Assembly (NCBI RefSeq): GCF_000150275.1
Contig: NW_002060954.1
Location: 1,054,001 to 1,118,000 of the forward strand
Direction: 5' to 3'
Source of the DNA: Trichoplax adhaerens
Taxonomy: Eukaryota > Animalia > Placozoa
Length of the DNA: 64,000 bases
Shown here: positions 10,129 through 20,722 of the stretch, in pieces
How positions within the stretch are numbered: the first letter of the stretch is position 1
How the letters are laid out: every line of letters begins with the position of its first letter
Position numbers and translations under genes: made by a program
The notes under the pieces: generated by a model
Databases searched by the model: none
Told to the model about the DNA's origin: nothing
The model's input: only the letters and a program-made list of their open reading frames with translations

Positions 10129-13100
10129 ATGGAAAACTGTTGCAATAGATTCGCGGATTTGGCTCTGGATTACAATACACCTAAAATTATTCATATTAAA
10201 AGCAAAGTTGTTGGATTTATAAACAGATTCATTCAACTTGCTATTGTTGGTTATATCATCGGGTAAGAAACATTAAACTGTAGGCAATCATTGCTAGTGC
10301 TCAAGTTTCGTATTAATTATAATAATTATTATTATAATTAACTTCATCAATTATGATTATTTAAACGATATCAAAATGGATGCTTTACTTGCAACTTGCC
10401 GTCGAAAATTAGAATGAATGAAACTGTTACACATTAAGATAATCTTAATGTTAATGTATTATAGTATAGGATTACATAGATATCAATTAAGTATTAGCTT
10501 GTACTGTATTTAAATTTTTAAATTCAGTTGTATGAGTAATCGATTACCTGGACAGCTAGGTAAATGCATGATGTCATCGTAGTGTAGCTTTGGCTCATCC
10601 CATACATTTTTTCTTTTATCGTTTTATGATTGGCACTTTCACAAAGTTCTTGGTGAATTTTTTGAGACAATGCATAAATTCATTAATTTTTCCTCAGTGC
10701 TAGATGCTTGCTGTATAATATATCATAAGACTTTATCGCTTTTACTAATTGTACGATCTTTACGTTAGATATGTTCTAGTTTATAAGAAAGGTTATCAAG
10801 AATTTGATACTGCTCAAAATTCTGTAACATCTAAAGTTAAAGGTGTAGCTTTTGTAAACTATACTAAAGATCCCAACATTGGAACAAGGGTATGGGATCC
10901 AGCCGACTATATAATTCCTCCTGAGGTACACTTAATCTATTTTAAATTTACTGGAAAGTGAGACTTTACGATAGTTTTATGGACAGTAATTTAATGTAGG
11001 AGACCCATGTTCAGCTTTGACCAATTCTACGAGTATTAATACACCTACTACCGTATCAATATATTCAACTCGTATCTATTAAAGGCATACACGCTTATTA
11101 CTAACCCTAACCAATTTTTTAAAAATTGTTACTGTTTAACATAGGAAAATGGGGCCTTTTTCGTCATGACCAACATGATTATTACTAAGAATCAAACAAA
11201 TACAGTATGTCCCGAGGTAAGGCTTACTTAATGTGGCAGAATATATTATTTGTACCTTATAATCTCATTATAAATCATACTACATGATGACGAATAACTA
11301 GTAATCATACTTGCAGGATATGTCCATTCGCGGAGCAAACTGTACTGATTCTACTGACTGCATACCTGGTAAACATTTATACCTAGGACATGGTAATGCT
11401 ACAAGATCAACTTCGATACATATTGTTTGCATTGTTACGTTTAAGTAGCCTAACTATACGTGTACGGTGCCCTAGAGTGATAATGGATAAATATAAATCT
11501 TAGTGATGTTTACCTATGAGTTTCCTATTTATTCGAGTGACGAGAAATAATGTGAACTGTATCACCATGTTGGATACTCCTATTATACTTTAGGCGTTAA
11601 CACAGGGGAGTGTGTACCTGTGTCACCGGATTCAGACGAAATGACTTGTGAAATTTATTCTTGGTGTCCGCTCGAATATGATCATCTTCGGTAAATTGAA
11701 GCTCTAATGTTTTGTAATTAGTCATTTAATAAATAATCTCCAAAAATTACGTCGGTTCATTTATTGCTTAGGACCAATTACCCCTTCCTGGGAGAAGCGG
11801 TAAATTTTACAGTATTAATCAAGAATAGTATTGCCTTTCCAAAATTTAACGTTCGAAGGTCAAATACAGTTGTTCATATATTCTTTTGATATGTTTTATG
11901 TGTAGTAACATCAATGTTTTTGCCTATTCAAAGGAGTAACATAGATGCCGTTAAAAATAGCGAAGACTTGAAGCATTGCATGTACGATCCCGTCCACGAT
12001 GCTCTATGTCCAATTCTTAAACTTGGAACTATAGTTAATAGCGCGGAGCAGGATTTTAATAAAATTGCCTATAAGGTAATAAAATAGAGTATACAGCTGT
12101 CAAGTGACCACAATCTCATTGAAGTAGAGTTTTATTGAATAAGACCTTCTTATTCCTGTATATAGATACTCTAGTGTTTAGTTTCAGCTTTAAACTTTGC
12201 ATCGAGCTTTTGCTCAATATTCATCTGATTGTTCATATTATAGGGAGGAGTTATCGCAATTATATTGAACTGGGACTGTAATCTGGACTTTGATATAAGG
12301 AACTGTCAACCTAAGTTAACCTTCAGAAGGTATAAAGTTACGATAGCATGGTTGAGAAGTAAAAAGCTCAAAGTAATAAGAAATATTATAATTGTAACTA
12401 TAATTAAAAATTTTTATACATCGGTAATTTACTCTAAACTGTTAAAGACTTGATGACCCCCATGCTCCGACGGCTGTTGGATATAACTTTAGGTATCTTG
12501 ATACTTACTGTAATTTGTATCATAAAATGCTTCTATTTAATTTCGACTTACGTAAAAAGTATGCAAATTAACCGAGTTCCATCTTCATATATTTAGATAC
12601 CCAATTTATTATGAGGTCAATAACAAGTTACATCGGGATCTTATTAAGGCTTATGGAATTAGATTTGTTTTTATAATTGTTGGTCGGGTAAGTGAGATAT
12701 ATTGGTATTGTACATTGCTTTTTCTGTTAATTTCATTTATTTGCAAAGTAACGTTGGAGTAACGTTAAATCGATAAGTATTATTAGGATTTTACCGCTAA
12801 GCCTACTGGTTTGCATATTCTACTACCATCATAAAGTTGATGTAAATTAGTACATGTTTGTAGTAAATTTTCTTCATTCGGTTTGTATAGGCCGGGAGAT
12901 TCTCTGTTGTTCCACTGCTTCTGAATATTGGTTCCGGGCTTGCCTTGTTGGCCATTGTAAGCTGATTTTTAAATTTTGATTATTGGGTTGTATGTCTAAA
13001 TACTAATTTACTGTATATTTTACTCGTTTAGGCATCTGTAATATCGGATGTTGTGATCCTATATGTATTGAAAAGACGACAATATTATAGATCTAAAAAA

Positions 13101-13160
13101 TATCAAACGGTGTCTCCATTTGATGATGACAGTCCGTTATTACAAGAGGACGTGGAATAA
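10129..13160 (+). CDS. P2RX: P2X purinergic receptor (ATP-gated cation channel), 12 exons
   Basis: The spliced product has the N-terminal YNTPK motif, TM1 (RFIQLAIVGYIIGYVLV), the ATP-site motifs SVTSKVKG, NFTVLIKN, GYNFR and RDLIKAYGIRF, WDPADY, all ten ectodomain cysteines, TM2 (NIGSGLALLAIASVISDVVILY) and YxxxK (YYRSKK). Stop TAA at 13158-13160. Confidence 0.96.
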
Positions 13161-15479
13161 CCTAGTAATCCAATAAATCGTTATTTTTGTGGTCTTTGAC
13201 AAATAATAATTAGCGATAGCTATATTCTCCTACTACTCTACATCGAGCATTAGTGCGAATGCGATGTTGTATATGTACGGATGTTAATAATTTACTGAAT
13301 AATATCACCTCTTTTTGAACTTAACATGAGGAGGAAATTCCTCTTGTGGTAGCAGCGTAGCAACTGTATAAAGCCAAACTGCATTATACGCTAGAATTAC
13401 ATAAAGTGTACATAACAGTACTGTAAGGATTAAGTTTACGAGACACTTATGATAGTAGTTTATCATGAGGCATTAGTCGGTATGTTAATCTTGTAGTATG
13501 ATGATTGAGATTTTACTTCTTAGACGATCTCACAATATTATGCGCTATTAGATATCACGGATGATTAGCATTAGTAAATACGTGCATTATTTTGGGTATA
13601 TCAAAGGTAAACTCTGTTATTATTCTAAGATATGGGAGGCCATATCAAGTAAGACTGATAGTATAGTAAATAGTGTAAAGTGAATCAAAATTTTACAGCA
13701 TTTTTGCATTGATACCTATATTATCCGAAATTTAATAACGTAAGTAACCTAACGATATTTGTAGCGAAATTACTTAGGATCTACTACAAGAAAGATTTCT
13801 GTAATACTCTATACAGATGCACAAATATCCTATCTTTCATAATGGTCTTAATTGTCGTTAACTTTTGATTAATAAAATTACACGTACAAATATTCGTAGG
13901 CTATGTACCTGCTATTAAATTAAATTAAGTATAACACTGTGCGATTAGCTAATTAGTTATAAAATAAATTAGCGAGCACGTTAGAAGCATCACTCTTATT
14001 ATATCATTAAGCTAGTGTTAAGATTCAATTATGTAGAAAAGATCTTCATGTGTACAATTTGCTTTTCGTATGGCTAATTAAACTGCAAAATTTGTGTCTA
14101 TACAATATTAATTTAAAAAACTTTATGGATTCTTCTTTATATCACTACTATCTACCAGTCTAAGGGTTCGCGAAAATATATCGTGATATTCCTCCGATAT
14201 AAGATAAATCATTGATACCAAATATATACTAGTGTATTTGAAAAACTACTCTGAATCAAAAATATCATAATGATTTTTATGCGCTATTAGTGATACCTGG
14301 GAGCTATAGTCATTAGAAAATTAGTATTATAGCATTAGGCTACAAATTTGTATTGGCCTCCTTACTATTTACAGGTATGACATAGTGATTAGTGAGAGCA
14401 TGACGATCGCGAGCTATACGCAACTCCCTCATATTAGTTTATAATAATTACACCTATACTTACGTTTTTTATGTGCGTTGATACTCAGTACTATAGCATA
14501 CAATATCATTTCATAACCGTATAGTTTATAGGATGTATTTATTAATAGACGAATACTCATTTTTCATACCAATTCGAAACAATGGAAGACTTGTCTAGTA
14601 TAAAATTCTTCTTGTCAGCTCTTTCAATAGAACATATCTTTTGTTTAAGGGAGAAGTATTTTTTATTCATCATAATATTAAGTATACAGTACTGGATCTG
14701 ATTGTTAATTTACGCATACAATACTTACGCTATATTGTTATACATATTGCATAGTTAGAATAATTTCGAAAATAGTGCTATAGATCGATCAGTTAGTTGC
14801 ATTAAGTAGTTATACAGTAAATAATAGATGCTATAGCGAAACACAGATCGAAGTACTTAGATAATAAGGGTAGAGTTCTAGGATTATAACTGCCTTGTCT
14901 GACTATTTAAATTTAGAATTACGTTACTTATATTCCTGGCACCTATAAAATTGATCGATTATTCTTTCTACCATTTCCAACTGAGTTTAGATATAATAAA
15001 AGTTGCCCGATCCTATGGAATGAAAATGATACACATAATATGAATTTTCTTTCAGGCGACTTCTTATAGAAAAGAAAAATCGGCAGAGGGAAGGATTACG
15101 TGCAAAGTTTTTTTGCACTGCCGAACACGATTAATTGTTTAAAATCTTAACCTGGGTATGTCTACTTTGAGTAACAAATATCGATTTAGCAAAGAATTAC
15201 AAAGTACCTTTATGAAATTGACATGCTTACGTATTTATCACAATTTTTTTCTAACTGTTTTACTTCTAACTCACCTATAAATGTTTGTATATACAGTACT
15301 TCTATATTCTAGGCTTCGATAATATTTTTTTTTTGAATGAATAGTTTAAAATCTAAAAGACTTCAATCCGTAAATGTACTAAAAATTGTGTACAATTTGA
15401 ACTAGATAGTTTGACTTATCTATTTTGTTCGCGATAGTATCGATCGATTTTTCAATGCCGGCCTATAACATTCCTCTAG

Positions 15480-18216
15480 TAGTAGTGGATCTCTCGGTTC
15501 TAAAATAGCAGGTAATACCAGTTATGAAGAATTATTGCGCTAACACTTTAACTTCTGGTACTGTAAGAAGTAATAGTTTAGATATTAAAAACTTATTTCC
15601 ATAATATACTATTTTAAGTCGCACATTTTATATACTTGGTCAAAACCTAAGTTCTATTCTCCGTATGAAGATTCTTAATATAAATACCAGTCAATTTTAA
15701 CATTATAACGAGTTGTTATACAATTGAGATATAGTTACAGTAATGAGTAAATTTGGCATAGTTATTAGAAGCGGGACTTATCTAATTGTCATGTATTTTA
15801 ACTACTTTAGGTAGTACGCTACGATAATTATGCACGAGTTAGCTAATTTTGATAGTATCAAGAATTAATATACAGCTAAATAAGGCTCAGAATAAATGGT
15901 CAGAATTTTCCTGATTGCATTTGAAGGACGATACAGCGTATACTTAGAATTAATAAATACGTTGGTTGTTAAGATACATTTTGGCAGTAGCAATCATCTA
16001 TAAAATGTAATGGAGTAAATAATTTTATCGTTATTACCCGCATCTGTACTGCGGAAACAAAAAAGCGATTAACGATATTGAAACAAAAAGAATACATAGC
16101 AAATTGGCATTTACAAGTATAATTCAATTGTCGAATTTCAGGTGAGTTGGCTTTTAATAGCCAAAATGTTAAGTTGTATGTTCACAAAGGCGATGATAAA
16201 ACTATGGATTCAGTATGGATGACATTAGCTAAAGATAAAGAAGAACTAAAAAAAGAAGGCATATTACATCGTGATAATTTCCTGGTTAGTAAATTTGACT
16301 AGAAATTTAATATTCGGGCAGTGCTGATTTTGGAACTCTTTTCATCAAACAATTTATATCACTGTCCTTAGATATGAATAATTTTTGAAATTCTAGTTTT
16401 TACTCAGTAGAATATTTACATATTTACATCGTTATGAAATACTGCAATGCCTGGTTACTTATGTTTAATTCATTATAGACTTTCACAAAGTGATATCATT
16501 ACTCGATAATTATTATGATACAAAATAATAAAGCCGTACTCTTCTAATAGCGAACTTTCTTAATACAGGGTAATATCATTTTAACTAATGTGTTGACCGA
16601 AGCAGTAAAAAATGCCGATTTTGTTTTTGAAGCTGCAGTCGATGATACTGATGTTAAGCGATCTATACTAGATAGTAAGTTCGATTTTTGAGTATGTATT
16701 GTTTATGAATTTATAATTTACTGATACTTATTGAGAGAGAATTGGCTGATAGTTCTAATCAAGTAAATTAATTGTTAATCGCATATCGATATATTCTCTG
16801 TGCCCACAGTCAACCTAATTATTTTATTCGCCTTATTCTTAGGAATATCGCATATGAGTCGACATGACACCATTATTGCCTCTAATACTATTCGATTAGA
16901 CATTAATGATTTGGCTCAATACGCTGAATACCCTGAAAGAGTGATCGGCCTACGATTCTTATACCCTGTATATTGTATTCCTGAGGTAGAATTAACTACG
17001 ACTGATTGTACAGCACCGTATGCTGTAGAGAAAGGTATGTCAATCATTTCATTACTCTAAACCAGTATGCATGTAGAGAATATAATCTGAAGGTGGCATC
17101 ACTATGAGTGTTCATCAAGTACAGTATATGCATAATCAACTTTCAATAAACTTTCTTTCTGCATTAAAGAAATTATATATTCATTGTGTAATATATGCAG
17201 TAAATAAGCTATGTAACACATTAACAGGGCTGATTGTATAGATATTGATTTAAATACAATAGATATAATATTTAAATCTATCGATCAAGTTCTTATGGGT
17301 TTTCCTATCTTTTTAATGTTATATTGTATTATAGTCAAAACGCTGTTAACAGAAATAGGAAAAACCCTACTTCCCAGATCTGGATCGCCGCTAGTCCTTA
17401 GTCCCCTTCAGATAGAAGCCAGGGTAATTGCTAAGCGTAACCGTATTGAAGAAACTAGAAGAAGAGCATTAACCACAGGAGAAACGTCTGACGTTAAAGG
17501 TAGCTACTCAATGATTATCGTAATCTAATAATTATTATGTTTGAAAGCGCTCTTAGCGATATCTGGTCACGAAATCCTGTTCGAGCTCAAATATAACCAC
17601 TGCATTAATATTGTTAAGAGTCTTTAATTATGAGATTATATAAAGATTTTGGACGCTTGTTACAAAGTAATAGGAACATTCTAATAAAGATATTTTTACT
17701 TTCATATGAAGTCTTCTTTTACAGACATAGTCGCACTGTACACATGCTATAGTTTGCTTAGGTTTGTCGTCAGTAATGCCTGGCTTTTTTAGCCCTTTTG
17801 GATGATATACCTTGTTACACAGGCGCCTATTTCATTTTCATTAATAAGACATAAAGGATTATTTAATACTTATTCTATAGTCTATACCCATACTTTGATC
17901 ACTCAATAGGTGTTTTATATTTTAGTACTGTACAATTATATATCACACTTAAGGTTTGCGCGATAGTTCTAGGTGTATGAAAATGTTTACTATTATCCCA
18001 ATCACATGAATATTTTTTAAATATTATCTCAAATTCGTTTTTATTTTAGAGAAAGAGTGTGCAATTTGTATGGATAAACCAAGAAATTGTGTCTTTAGGC
18101 CGTGTAATCACATGTGTAGTTGTATAGATTGTGCAAAGATCGTCAAGAAAAGAAGTGATGGATGTCCGATTTGTCGTAAAAGAATAACCGAGGTCTTAAG
18201 AGTATTTCAATCTTAA
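15480..18216 (+). CDS. 3-hydroxyacyl-CoA dehydrogenase-like NAD-binding domain fused to a C-terminal C3HC4 RING finger (start codon unresolved)
   Basis: In-phase exons: about 15480-15511 (SGSLGSKIA), 16142-16284 (GELAFNSQNVKLY...), 16569-16674 (AVKNADFVFEAAVDDTDVKRSIL), 16843-17034 (IIASNTIRL...ERVIGLRFLYPVYCIPEVEL), 17335-17499 (VKTLLTEIGKT...linker) and 18050-18216 (KECAICMDKPRNCVFRPCNHMCSCIDCAKIVKKRSDGCPICRKRITEVLRVFQS*). A candidate ATG at 15337 would need a weak donor. Confidence 0.85.
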
Positions 18217-19046: not shown

Positions 19047-20722
19047 TCATAATTTTAACAACACACGAACTTTTTGTACCACAAACAGCATGACCGCATT
19101 AGCTGGAATAGAACGCATCAGGCAAGGCGTAAAACCTGGTTTCGTGATTTTTAAAAAATTGACGAGTAAGATATTGATGGAACCTTTATGATGTAATTAT
19201 TAGTTATCCAACATATAATTAATTATTACGTACCTCTATAAAATCTCTTCCAACCTTCTTCTTGGTATAAAGTTCGTATACATTGTAAAATGCTTGGATA
19301 TTTCCTCTTTGTAACTTCTGAAGCATCAGCTTGCATTGCTGATTTAATTACATCAGTAGGGTAAGTCACAAACCAGTATAAAAACCCAGCTATTCCACCA
19401 GAAAGGAGTAGATCTGAGGCTGATAAGTCGGCCGTAGTGCCCCCTACATTAATATTGATTTGATTTTAAAATTGATTTATGAGAAATTCGCCCTATTCAT
19501 GTACGTATATTTAGTACTAATGACCATAGAAGATCGCTTAGCGTCTATTATGTCATTACTTCGTTAAACTAAAACAAATTACACAATGGTTTCTGTGTAT
19601 GAATTCCGATATAACCTTTTGGAGTCATATACGTCATCAATGCTTCAAAAGAACCAAAGTAAAAGGCATTGGATGGTATATTTCGTAGGCAGACAGCAGG
19701 TAATGCTTGATAGATTCCTCTAATTCCATATTTTTGAGATATAACACTAGCACAGTGGAATACATTACGATAACTGGCAGGTTGACCTTGTTTTACTTTC
19801 ATAATTTCAGTTTGCATTTTAGACTTAAACTTTTTCAAAAATTATGCAAAGGAATTTGTATTAATTATTGAAACAAAGTATAGTTGCTGTGTTTTATTGC
19901 TATAGTTTAAAATTGGTATCTATCAGTATCTTACCAAATCGATTGGTCCTTCTATAAATGAAACAATGAAGCCAGTATACATCCCACATCGGAAATATTC
20001 GCTGCCATTAAGTCTAGTATGGTTATCCTTATTTCGTTTAAAGAATTCTTGTGACTAGCGTAGTAAGAAAGCAAATTGAAAGTCAATTCTATTCGGTAAG
20101 AATAAGAGAAGTGAATAGACTGCATTAGCAATAGTGATTAATTACTATTTGATCTTGCTCAAAATGAGCTATTAGATTTACTGTTTACAGAGATAATTAA
20201 TTCAGAATCCTACTGTGCTACTCATGCAAGCAAGAACACCGTACAAAGTTGGGTGTTCTTCATATCGATTTCAAACCTGAAAATATGTTGTAAATAAAGT
20301 TGCACGAAAAAACATTTGCCCGACAAGAGGGGAACCTAAATACGTAGAAATCGTACACATATAATAATAATTTATTCTTCTGGTAGACTAATCAACTAGT
20401 ATTGAATTAGATTCTAACCAGTATGGATAATGTATCATTATGTATAATTATGTAAATGATATCATGTGCTCTGTGATCTCTTACCAACTCCTTTGTATAA
20501 ACCGGCTATGCCTTCCCATCGCAATGTCTTTATGAAACAGTCACGCAATCCAACGTAAACTGGATTCGCTACACTTTGAGTCTGCAGTCGTACTTTCAAC
20601 GTATCGAACGGATGACCAATCAAGCATACTGCTATTCCCCCCAAAGTTCCTGAGATAGCGTTTTTAACAATTTTATAAGCATTAGACGGTGTCTGAACTT
20701 TAGCAATGTCTAGGTCAGGCAT
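19047..20722 (-). CDS. Mitochondrial carrier (SLC25), carnitine/acylcarnitine or basic amino acid carrier subfamily
   Basis: Three carrier repeats with Px[DE]xx[KR] signatures: GHPFDTLKVRLQTQ, EGPIDLFKSKMQ and TYPTDVIKSAMQ. Also EGIAGLYKG, RNIPSNAFYF and RSIPANAVM. ATG at 20722, stop TGA at 19049-19047. Confidence 0.92.

What the first reader, a model, noticed from the sequence alone, without database searches (positions are those of the whole stretch)
15480..18216. Pseudo-dehydrogenase Rossmann domain fused to a RING finger: candidate metabolite-sensing E3 ubiquitin ligase
Seen in sequence: the 3-hydroxyacyl-CoA dehydrogenase (3HCDH)-like exons splice in phase into a complete C3HC4 RING exon (donor after 17499, phase 1; acceptor before 18050; junction DVK-E-KECAICMD). 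The RING ends the protein. Established: in 3HCDH enzymes the catalytic His lies in GxHFxNP...VE, a Ser in ASNTSS binds cofactor/substrate, an acidic residue ending strand B selects NAD, and a helical C-terminal dimerisation domain (PGFIVNR) completes the active site. Here GLHFFNP is GLRFLYP (His to Arg, Asn to Tyr), ASNTSS is ASNTIR, strand B ends VKLYVHK without the Asp, and the whole dimerisation domain is replaced by a short basic helical linker plus a RING of the IAP/MDM2/Mind-bomb style (CxxC...PCxHxCxCxxC...CPICR, hydrophobic tail). Inference: a catalytically dead nucleotide- or acyl-CoA-binding module repurposed as the sensor or substrate adaptor of an E3 ligase, linking redox or fatty-acid metabolism to ubiquitination. 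I know of no characterised protein with this architecture, though uncharacterised homologues may exist in other invertebrates.
Basis: partly seen in the sequence, partly recalled or inferred. Interest (0 to 1): 0.88.

Follow-up and report, generated by a model that had tools for sequence, protein, structure and literature searches.

The report
Dead dehydrogenase domain fused to RING ligase
This is a real Trichoplax gene from an old, uncharacterised family found in animals and choanoflagellates, joining a catalytically disabled 3-hydroxyacyl-CoA-dehydrogenase-type nucleotide-binding domain to a ubiquitin-ligase RING finger; databases hold it under wrong enzyme names and nobody has tested its function.

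Summary
The exons at 16142-18216 (+) match the annotated Trichoplax adhaerens protein TRIADDRAFT_59820 (P0248, 236 aa) at 100%. Pfam finds 3HCDH_N in exons c and d and zf-C3HC4_3 in the last exon.

The fusion is not a gene-model artefact. More than 100 proteins of about 290 aa share the architecture. They come from molluscs, annelids, echinoderms, hemichordates, amphioxus, chelicerates, a barnacle, rotifers, a flatworm, cnidarians, a sponge and three choanoflagellates.

Across the family the catalytic His is always Arg, the catalytic Ser is Leu/Met/Ile, and the 3HCDH C-domain is missing. GxGxxG, the strand-2 Asp, and the invariant Glu and Lys are kept. The RING keeps its zinc ligands, E2-contact Ile and Pro, the Arg after the last Cys, and an IAP/MDM2/MUL1-type tail. 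A homodimer model passes (0.38 against control 0.00).

The Trichoplax copy departs from the family: SxGxxG, Val in place of the Asp, and no linker motif.

I found no paper on the family, and database names call it an enzyme. The sensor idea is plausible but untested. Trichoplax RNA evidence could not be obtained. The scan's earlier notes did not show this family on other DNA.

The parts
15480..15511 (+). Candidate mini-exon, entered after two bases of a codon. It encodes SSGSLGSKIA plus the first base of Gly, the remnant of the GxGxxG loop. It is not in the annotated model.
   Evidence: Translation. It is flanked by AG (15478-79) and GTAATA (15512-). It matches the orthologues' G-x-x-G-x-K-I-A-G. 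An in-frame stop at 15466-68 means an upstream ATG exon is needed, and none was found.
16142..16284 (+). Exon b: end of helix A, strand 2 (VKLYVHK, no Asp) and the following helix. The annotated CDS begins at Met 16204.
   Evidence: P0248 matches at 100% from 16204. Orthologues align from 16132-35. P0290, from a related placozoan contig, is 100% identical over 16144-16284 while its flanks differ.
16569..16674 (+). Exon c: Rossmann strand 4 and helix, with the family-invariant Glu and Lys (FEAAVDDTDVK).
   Evidence: Pfam 3HCDH_N, E 7.8e-4 (19.8 bits, just under Pfam's 22-bit cut-off for this 35-aa exon alone), profile positions 67-97. P0248 matches at 100%.
16843..17034 (+). Exon d: the former active-site region. 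ASNTIR has Ile in place of the catalytic Ser. GLRFLYP has Arg for His and Tyr for Asn. PEVE keeps the dyad Glu.
   Evidence: Pfam 3HCDH_N, E 1.2e-10. Aligned to solved enzymes. Family statistics. Single copy in the genome.
17335..17499 (+). Exon e: the last strand of the Rossmann domain (KTLLPRSG) and a basic helix that stands where the 3HCDH C-domain would be.
   Evidence: P0248 matches at 100%, and orthologues align at 17334-17459. In the orthologue model these are strand 173-176 and helix 187-206. No Pfam hit.
18050..18216 (+). Last exon: a C3HC4 RING with the C-terminal tail LRVFQS, then the stop codon.
   Evidence: Pfam zf-C3HC4_3, E 2.8e-15. The closest solved RINGs are MUL1, MDM4/MDM2, cIAP2 and XIAP. 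The predicted dimer interface uses residues 231-235 and 200-204 of P0248.

Best explanation
One gene (TRIADDRAFT_59820, with an N-terminus longer than annotated) encodes a cytosolic RING-type E3 ubiquitin ligase. Its N-terminal two thirds are a 3-hydroxyacyl-CoA-dehydrogenase-type Rossmann domain that can no longer act as that enzyme. The gene belongs to a single old orthologous family of animals and choanoflagellates.

Shown:
- the gene structure and the two domains;
- the family and its single origin;
- replacement of catalytic His by Arg and of Ser by a hydrophobic residue in every member;
- absence of the C-terminal domain that carries the fourth catalytic residue and makes the enzyme dimer;
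- conservation of all RING zinc ligands, and of the Ile, Pro and Arg that in related RINGs contact E2 and ubiquitin.

Inferred:
- The RING dimerises through its C-terminal tail, as IAP, MDM2 and MUL1 RINGs do, and recruits an E2~ubiquitin.
- The Rossmann domain serves as the specificity or regulatory module.
- In most members it still binds a dinucleotide, most likely NAD(H). The invariant segment RFL-x-PVY-x-IPEVE forms a conserved pocket or surface that binds a ligand or a substrate protein.
- In Trichoplax the dinucleotide site is altered (SxGxxG; Val-His-Lys where the Asp should be). Binding there may be lost or shifted towards NADP(H).
For: Gene model:
- 100% tblastn match of P0248 to five exons, with the predicted junctions.
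- Pfam scanned per exon.
- A RING exon standing alone would have no start codon before its first Cys pair.

Family:
- About 110 clusters carry PF02737 plus PF13920, at E 1e-139 to 1e-48.
- Many full-length members sit on 1-2.5 kb Logan contigs, which are too short to hold introns. I read these as transcripts.

Single origin: the Rossmann domains of the fused proteins form one side of a branch with SH-aLRT 99, and choanoflagellates branch first.

Dead active site:
- R136 is 100% and F137/P140/V141/E148 are 99-100%.
- Position 115 is Leu 0.79 or Met 0.18 where enzymes have Ser.
- Position 139 is F/Y/H where enzymes have Asn.
- Alignments to 2wtb, 4om8 and 9fbd place this Arg on their catalytic His.

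Retained nucleotide motifs: G8, G10 and G13 are essentially invariant where the N-terminus is present. D31 is 0.90, E84 is 1.00 and K93 is 1.00.

Fold:
- The AlphaFold2 model of orthologue P0174 has mean pLDDT 88. It shows a Rossmann domain at 1-185, a helix at 187-206, a disordered stretch at 207-235 and the RING at 236-291.
- About 180 columns superpose on HADH and Hbd NAD-binding domains at 1.8-3 A, E about 1e-17.

RING:
- C240, C243, C255, H257, C261, C264, C275, C278, P276 and R279 are 100%. I242 is Ile or Val.
- The tail R-V-[YF]-H-S is conserved.
- The homodimer model scores 0.38 against a best control of 0.00. That mark was reached by 21 of 30 solved homodimers and 0 of 23 solved single chains. 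The runs agree in at least 85% of contacts and partner pLDDT is 83.
Against: - There is no RNA or protein evidence from Trichoplax itself.
- The first coding exon is missing, so the true N-terminus is unknown.
- Trichoplax departs from the family at two dinucleotide-binding positions and lacks the conserved linker motif.
- No binding or ligase activity has been measured for any member.
- The dimer pass may reflect the model's memory of solved IAP and MDM2 RING dimers (caveat given).
- Retained motifs do not prove that a ligand binds.
Confidence: 0.6

Rival explanations
1. The Rossmann domain is only a protein-binding or structural module. It binds no nucleotide and simply presents substrates to the RING, or holds the protein in a complex.
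For: The strongest conservation is in the former catalytic loop and strand (RFL-x-PVY-x-IPEVE), which could be a protein-binding surface. Trichoplax tolerates loss of the first Gly and of the strand-2 Asp. Pseudoenzymes of Rossmann type that act through partners are described, for example GFOD1 (PMC11612644, title and abstract seen).
Against: In the other members GxGxxG, D31, E84 and K93 are kept as strictly as in active enzymes. That is hard to explain without a dinucleotide.
Confidence: 0.25
2. The protein is still an oxidoreductase with changed chemistry, with Arg taking over from His. It would then be a bifunctional enzyme-ligase.
For: The Arg-Glu pair and the pocket around it are invariant. 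This shows selection on that site, not decay.
Against: The catalytic Ser is hydrophobic in all members. The C-domain that closes the substrate cleft and carries the fourth catalytic residue is absent. No 3HCDH enzyme among the hits has Arg at this position.
Confidence: 0.07
3. The fusion is a gene-model artefact in Trichoplax, and the RING exon belongs to another gene.
For: No Trichoplax transcript could be examined. The intron 17500-18049 is the longest between the annotated coding exons.
Against: The same fusion appears in more than 100 species, including intron-free contigs. The phases fit. The RING exon has no start codon before its first zinc ligands. The next gene lies on the other strand.
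Confidence: 0.02

Closest known systems
3-hydroxyacyl-CoA dehydrogenase family (HADH/SCHAD, Hbd, the dehydrogenase part of MFE1/FadB, FHMPC dehydrogenase, lambda-crystallin CRYL1)
   Same: The NAD-binding domain fold is the same: Pfam PF02737, and Foldseek E about 1e-17 at roughly 2 A over about 180 columns. In the family, GxGxxG, the strand-2 Asp, the EA-x-x-E-x-x-x-x-K motif and the dyad Glu are kept.
   Different: The catalytic His is Arg and the catalytic Ser is Leu/Met/Ile. The Asn three residues after the His is Phe/Tyr/His. The whole C-terminal helical domain (PF00725: dimer interface, substrate cleft, fourth catalytic residue) is absent. A RING is attached.
C-terminal dimeric RING E3 ligases of the zf-C3HC4_3 type (MUL1, MDM2/MDM4, cIAP1/2, XIAP, MEX3C, MGRN1, CGRRF1)
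   Same: The RING subtype is the same, at E 1e-9 to 1e-5 against these solved chains, and the alignment reaches the C-terminal tail. The conserved Ile, Pro and Arg are where these RINGs meet E2~ubiquitin (that role is my own knowledge). A tail-mediated dimer is predicted.
   Different: None of these carries a dehydrogenase-type Rossmann domain. Their partner domains are BIR, p53-binding, KH or transmembrane segments.
RING ligases with a nucleotide-derivative-binding domain: Deltex RING-DTC (NAD+/ADP-ribose; PMC7500938) and RNF146 WWE-RING (switched on by iso-ADP-ribose; my own knowledge)
   Same: They work in the way proposed here: a small-molecule pocket next to a RING that changes what the ligase does.
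   Different: The folds are unrelated (DTC and WWE, not Rossmann). There is no homology and no evidence here of ligand control.
Non-catalytic Rossmann-type redox sensors (NmrA, HSCARG/NMRAL1, Rex; my own knowledge) and the pseudoenzyme GFOD1 (PMC11612644)
   Same: A dehydrogenase fold kept for dinucleotide binding and partner control rather than for catalysis.
   Different: They belong to different Rossmann families, and none is fused to a ubiquitin-ligase domain.

Membership tests
3-hydroxyacyl-CoA dehydrogenase enzymes (EC 1.1.1.35 type) | NAD-binding domain PF02737 | tested here: met
   Exon d scores E 1.2e-10 (42 bits, over the 22-bit cut-off). Exon c alone scores E 7.8e-4 (19.8 bits, just under it). 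Fold match of the orthologue model.
3-hydroxyacyl-CoA dehydrogenase enzymes (EC 1.1.1.35 type) | Catalytic His in G-x-H-F-x-N-P | tested here: not met
   Arg in the window (GLRFLYP) and in 100% of family members. It aligns on the His of 2wtb, 4om8 and 9fbd.
3-hydroxyacyl-CoA dehydrogenase enzymes (EC 1.1.1.35 type) | Catalytic Ser in S-N-T-S | tested here: not met
   Ile in the window. Leu 0.79 or Met 0.18 in the family, and Ser in all seven reference enzymes.
3-hydroxyacyl-CoA dehydrogenase enzymes (EC 1.1.1.35 type) | C-terminal helical domain PF00725 | tested here: not met
   No Pfam hit in any exon. There is no PF00725 hit on this contig. In the orthologue model, only a helix and a disordered linker lie between the Rossmann domain and the RING.
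3-hydroxyacyl-CoA dehydrogenase enzymes (EC 1.1.1.35 type) | GxGxxG and an acidic residue at the end of strand 2 | tested here: inconclusive
   Both are kept in the family (G8/G10/G13; D31 at 0.90). In the window they read S-x-G-x-x-G, and only if the mini-exon is real. Val stands in place of the Asp.
RING-type E3 ligase, zf-C3HC4_3 subtype | Eight zinc ligands in C3HC4 order | tested here: met
   Pfam E 2.8e-15 covering the full profile. All ligands are invariant in 72 sequences.
RING-type E3 ligase, zf-C3HC4_3 subtype | E2-contact Ile and Pro, and Arg after the last Cys | tested here: met
   CAIC and CPICR are in the window. In the family I242 is Ile or Val, P276 is 100% and R279 is 100%. 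Their role is known from related RINGs and was not tested here.
RING-type E3 ligase, zf-C3HC4_3 subtype | Ubiquitin-ligase activity | not testable with these tools
   This needs an in vitro assay.
RING-type E3 ligase, zf-C3HC4_3 subtype | Dimer through the C-terminal tail | tested here: met
   Model only. It scores 0.38 against a best control of 0.00. The mark was reached by 21 of 30 solved homodimers and 0 of 23 solved single chains. The runs agree in at least 85% of contacts and partner pLDDT is 83. Tail residues 231-235 contact 200-204. The pass may come from the model's memory of solved relatives.
3HCDH_N-RING orthologous family (unnamed) | Invariant R-F-L-x-P-V ... E-V-E core followed by a C-terminal RING | tested here: met
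   P0248 carries every invariant column of alignment A3. Profile E 2.1e-75.
3HCDH_N-RING orthologous family (unnamed) | Linker motif [IV]-P-x-L-x-H-x-G-N | tested here: not met
   Trichoplax has a gap over positions 206-225 of the reference.

The most novel reading that the evidence does not exclude
The family is a dinucleotide-gated ubiquitin ligase. Binding of NAD(H), or NADP(H) in Trichoplax, to the dead dehydrogenase domain would change RING activity or substrate choice. Cellular redox state would then be read directly into ubiquitination, by a system that arose before animals and was later lost in vertebrates. A still bolder variant, not excluded, is that the domain holds NAD+ next to E2~ubiquitin for a Deltex-like modification of ubiquitin. 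I put that variant at about 0.03.
Probability: 0.25. Interest if true: 0.8.

Novelty: new variant of a known kind. Interest (0 to 1): 0.55.

Why it matters
RING ligases take their specificity from accessory domains. A dehydrogenase-derived Rossmann domain in that role has, as far as the searched literature shows, never been described.

The family is old (choanoflagellates to amphioxus) and strongly conserved. I did not find it in vertebrates, which probably explains why nobody has studied it.

Its active site has been rebuilt rather than left to decay, while the cofactor motifs are kept. That is the signature of a ligand-binding pseudoenzyme. It makes one question directly testable with simple biochemistry: can metabolic cofactors gate ubiquitination?

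There is also a practical point. Public databases name these proteins 3-hydroxybutyryl-CoA dehydrogenase, lambda-crystallin, L-carnitine dehydrogenase or AIM1-like. These names are almost certainly wrong and will distort metabolic reconstructions of invertebrates.

Tried and rejected
The related placozoan locus could not be fetched.
- First exon: I listed every ATG-started open stretch in 13160-15479 that ends two bases before a GT. None resembles the orthologues' start, M-V-[KR]-I-A-V-I.
- ESM Atlas with exon d returned only generic bacterial 3HCDH_N fragments.
- Own-genome searches found no second copy and no allelic contig.
- Six literature searches found nothing on this architecture or on the Trichoplax locus tag. 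In one search I guessed one accession number, which should be ignored.
- A search with the amphioxus member found no vertebrate or tunicate relative. That tool needs shared five-residue words, so the blank is weak evidence.
- I did not use a second structure job on P0248, because it lacks the first strand-loop-helix.
No search or fold was run on a spliced model of my own. Exons were searched one by one by reference, and the database protein P0248 stood in for the spliced product from Met 16204 onwards.
Full report
**What is there**

The window is AT-rich animal DNA. Its assembly has 105.6 Mb in 1414 contigs. The gene product is identical to a protein that NCBI and UniRef hold as TRIADDRAFT_59820 of Trichoplax adhaerens (P0248).

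Reading the sequence gives six exons on the + strand:
- 15480-15511
- 16142-16284
- 16569-16674
- 16843-17034
- 17335-17499
- 18050-18216, with the stop at 18214-16

All have AG/GT borders, and the phases fit. tblastn of P0248 onto the window matches the last five exons at 100%.

Pfam, run exon by exon by reference, gives:
- 3HCDH_N for exon c (E 7.8e-4, 19.8 bits, just under the 22-bit cut-off for this 35-aa piece alone; profile positions 67-97)
- 3HCDH_N for exon d (E 1.2e-10, 42 bits; profile positions 101-161)
- nothing for exon e
- zf-C3HC4_3 over its full length for the last exon (E 2.8e-15)

The neighbours are a P2X receptor gene upstream on the same strand and a mitochondrial-carrier gene downstream on the other strand. 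The locus therefore has room for one gene only.

**The N-terminus**

The annotated protein starts at Met 16204, but the reading frame and the homology continue upstream. Orthologues align from about 16132 (…I-A-G-E-L-A-Y-H-G-H-R-V-K-I-Y-D against GELAFNSQNVKLYVHKGDD).

A 76-aa open frame from a 580-base contig of a related placozoan (P0290) is 100% identical to 16144-16284. It differs on both sides exactly where I place the splice sites. So the 20 codons before the annotated Met are coding, and the public model is truncated.

The 32-base mini-exon (SSGSLGSKIA) fits the orthologues' G-x-x-G-x-K-I-A-G. It has an in-frame stop just upstream, so it needs a further exon carrying the ATG. I could not find a convincing one.

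One oddity: an ATG at 15455 opens the frame MPAYNIPLVVV…, which would be a good first strand. It is one base out of register with the GSLGSKIAG frame. Whether this is an assembly error, a real frameshift or chance cannot be decided here.

No search or fold was run on such a joined sequence.

**The family**

An exhaustive phmmer search with exon d found 170 proteins at E of 0.001 or better. The closest full-length ones carry both the Rossmann domain and a C-terminal RING.

A profile of seven of them retrieved about 110 clusters with PF02737 plus PF13920, mostly 280-330 aa long, at E 1e-139 to 1e-48. After these the scores fall to 1e-31 and below, where ordinary enzymes begin.

The named sources cover these groups:
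- gastropods, bivalves, cephalopods and a chiton
- annelids, a brachiopod, nemerteans and a priapulid
- spiders, a tick, a mite, a horseshoe crab, a sea spider, a millipede and a barnacle
- rotifers and a flatworm
- sea urchins, starfish, a brittle star and a crinoid
- acorn worms and amphioxus
- a coral, a jellyfish, the sponge Oscarella and Trichoplax
- the choanoflagellates Salpingoeca punica, S. helianthica and Barroeca monosierra

Many full-length members lie on Logan contigs of 1.0-2.5 kb. These are too short to hold introns, so I read them as transcripts. The fused reading frame is therefore expressed as one mRNA in many species.

No vertebrate, tunicate, insect or nematode member appeared. 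From my own knowledge the human 3HCDH_N proteins are HADH, HADHA, EHHADH and CRYL1, and none has a RING. The searches cannot prove absence.

In a quick maximum-likelihood tree of the Rossmann domains, 52 fused proteins and 49 ordinary enzymes fall on opposite sides of one branch (SH-aLRT 99). The choanoflagellate members branch first inside the fused group. Three caveats apply. The groups were picked by the Arg or His motif, which is one of the 187 columns. The careful search did not finish. P0248 was left out because it is N-terminally truncated.

**The active site is dead but the cofactor site is kept**

I aligned 101 full-length members with seven enzymes, numbering by the Saccoglossus protein P0174.

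Positions that have changed from the enzyme state:
- Position 136 is Arg in 100% of members. It aligns on the catalytic His of solved enzymes (GAHFFSP, GMHWSNP, GMHFFNP).
- Position 115 is Leu 0.79 or Met 0.18, and Ile in Trichoplax. All enzymes have Ser there.
- Position 139 is Phe, Tyr or His instead of Asn.
- Every protein in the set with a RING has G-x-R-F-L-x-P or a close variant. Proteins with the His form of the motif have none.

Positions that are kept:
- The dyad Glu (E148) is 100%.
- G8, G10 and G13 are essentially invariant wherever the N-terminus is present.
- D31 at the end of strand 2 is 0.90.
- E84 and K93, also invariant in the enzymes, are 1.00.

The segment R-F-L-x-P-V-Y-x-I-P-E-V-E is the most conserved part of the whole protein. 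The site has been remodelled under selection rather than left to drift.

The residue roles (Ser137, His158, Glu170 and Asn208 in human HADH) are from my own knowledge of the HADH literature. The fourth residue, Asn208, lies in the C-domain, which is missing here.

**Structure**

An AlphaFold2 model of P0174, built with a 72-sequence alignment, has mean pLDDT 88. It shows:
- a Rossmann domain at 1-185 (pLDDT about 95)
- a long basic helix at 187-206
- a disordered stretch at 207-235
- the RING at 236-291

Foldseek aligns about 180 residues with the NAD-binding domains of FHMPC dehydrogenase, Hbd, HADH, L-gulonate dehydrogenase and MFE1, at E about 1e-17 and 1.8-3 A. Nothing in the model stands in for the enzymes' C-terminal domain. 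The genome's only PF00725 hit lies on another contig, next to a canonical 3HCDH_N gene.

The proteins begin directly with the first strand and end in H-S or Q-S. I therefore see no targeting peptide or SKL-type peroxisomal signal, and I infer a cytosolic location.

**The RING**

All eight zinc ligands, Pro276 and Arg279 are invariant, and position 242 is Ile or Val. In related RINGs these are the E2 and ubiquitin contacts (my own knowledge).

The closest solved relatives of the Trichoplax RING exon are MUL1, MDM4, MDM2, cIAP2, MEX3C, cIAP1, MGRN1, XIAP and CGRRF1. The alignments run into the C-terminal tail. That tail, R-V-[YF]-H-S, is conserved across the family.

A two-copy model of P0248 residues 176-236 supports a homodimer:
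- It scores 0.38, against a best control of 0.00.
- The mark was reached by 21 of 30 solved homodimers and by 0 of 23 solved single chains.
- The runs agree in at least 85% of contacts, and partner pLDDT is 83.
- The tail (231-235) lies against residues 200-204 of the other copy.

Because IAP and MDM2 RING dimers are solved, this pass may reflect memory of those structures. It shows likeness, not binding.

**How it most likely works**

The protein is a cytosolic, probably dimeric RING E3. Its Rossmann domain no longer catalyses 3-hydroxyacyl-CoA oxidation and instead serves as the specificity or regulatory module. For the family as a whole I think dinucleotide binding is more likely than not (about 0.6). 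I put ligand control of ligase activity at about 0.25-0.3.

Trichoplax is the outlier:
- The first Gly of the loop is Ser, if the mini-exon is real.
- The Asp is Val, followed by His-Lys. That pattern is seen in NADP-preferring Rossmann sites (my own knowledge).
- The conserved linker motif [IV]-P-x-L-x-H-x-G-N is deleted.

Its dinucleotide binding is therefore doubtful, or its preference has changed. An acyl-CoA sensor is unlikely because half of the acyl-CoA cleft is gone.

**Novelty**

The gene and its relatives are already in public databases as predicted proteins with both Pfam domains, so the sequence itself is not new. All names are automatic. Examples are "3-hydroxybutyryl-CoA dehydrogenase-like", "lambda-crystallin homolog", "L-carnitine dehydrogenase-like", "AIM1-like" and "RING-type domain-containing protein".

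Six full-text searches found no paper on the architecture or the locus.

I rate it a new variant of a known kind: a RING E3 with an accessory domain not described before. It is an interesting pseudoenzyme case and a cheap target for biochemistry, but it is not a new principle until ligand control is shown.

**Limits**

So there are no Trichoplax transcripts and no second placozoan locus.
- Absence from vertebrates and other groups is not proven.

Noticed in passing
window 15455-15508: An ATG opens the frame MPAYNIPLVVVDLSVLK*. It overlaps the mini-exon but is one base out of register with the homologous GSLGSKIAG frame. A one-base indel near 15485-88 would produce a complete first strand plus glycine loop with its own start codon.
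   Followed up: partly
window 16142-16203: The public model TRIADDRAFT_59820 starts at Met 16204 and so lacks at least 20 conserved codons. A related placozoan contig (P0290) keeps them at 100% identity while its flanks differ.
   Followed up: yes
P0174 positions 206-225 (orthologues); gap in P0248: A conserved short motif, [IV]-P-x-L-x-H-x-G-N, sits in the otherwise disordered linker between helix and RING (P216 0.95, L218 0.91). It is deleted in Trichoplax. It may be a docking or autoinhibitory motif.
   Followed up: no
P0006 (millipede Chamberlinius hualienensis, 478 aa): This orthologue carries an extra N-terminal PX domain (PF00787) before the Rossmann-RING unit. It is either a lineage-specific fusion or a merged gene model.
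   Followed up: no
P0018 and P0038 clusters (JGI and Logan, 368-394 aa): A divergent branch of the family has G-C-R-F-M-x-P and longer proteins. It is of unknown taxon and groups with a jellyfish member in the tree.
   Followed up: no
window 10749-13160 (+): A multi-exon P2X ATP-gated receptor gene lies directly upstream (Pfam PF00864, E 8e-15 and 9e-11 on two exons).
   Followed up: partly
window 19226-19369 (-): An exon of a mitochondrial carrier gene (PF00153, E 7e-12) lies on the opposite strand about 1 kb past the RING stop codon.
   Followed up: partly
G000:C1412:8782221-8783536 and G000:C1408:2633250-2633740: Canonical 3HCDH genes lie elsewhere in the genome. The one on C1412 has both N and C domains. 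The RING-fused gene is therefore not the organism's beta-oxidation dehydrogenase.
   Followed up: partly
database names of P0153, P0154, P0190, P0292, P0008 and others: Automatic names give these His-less proteins enzyme functions: 3-hydroxybutyryl-CoA dehydrogenase, AIM1-like, lambda-crystallin, L-carnitine dehydrogenase and FHMPC dehydrogenase. This looks like systematic misannotation.
   Followed up: yes
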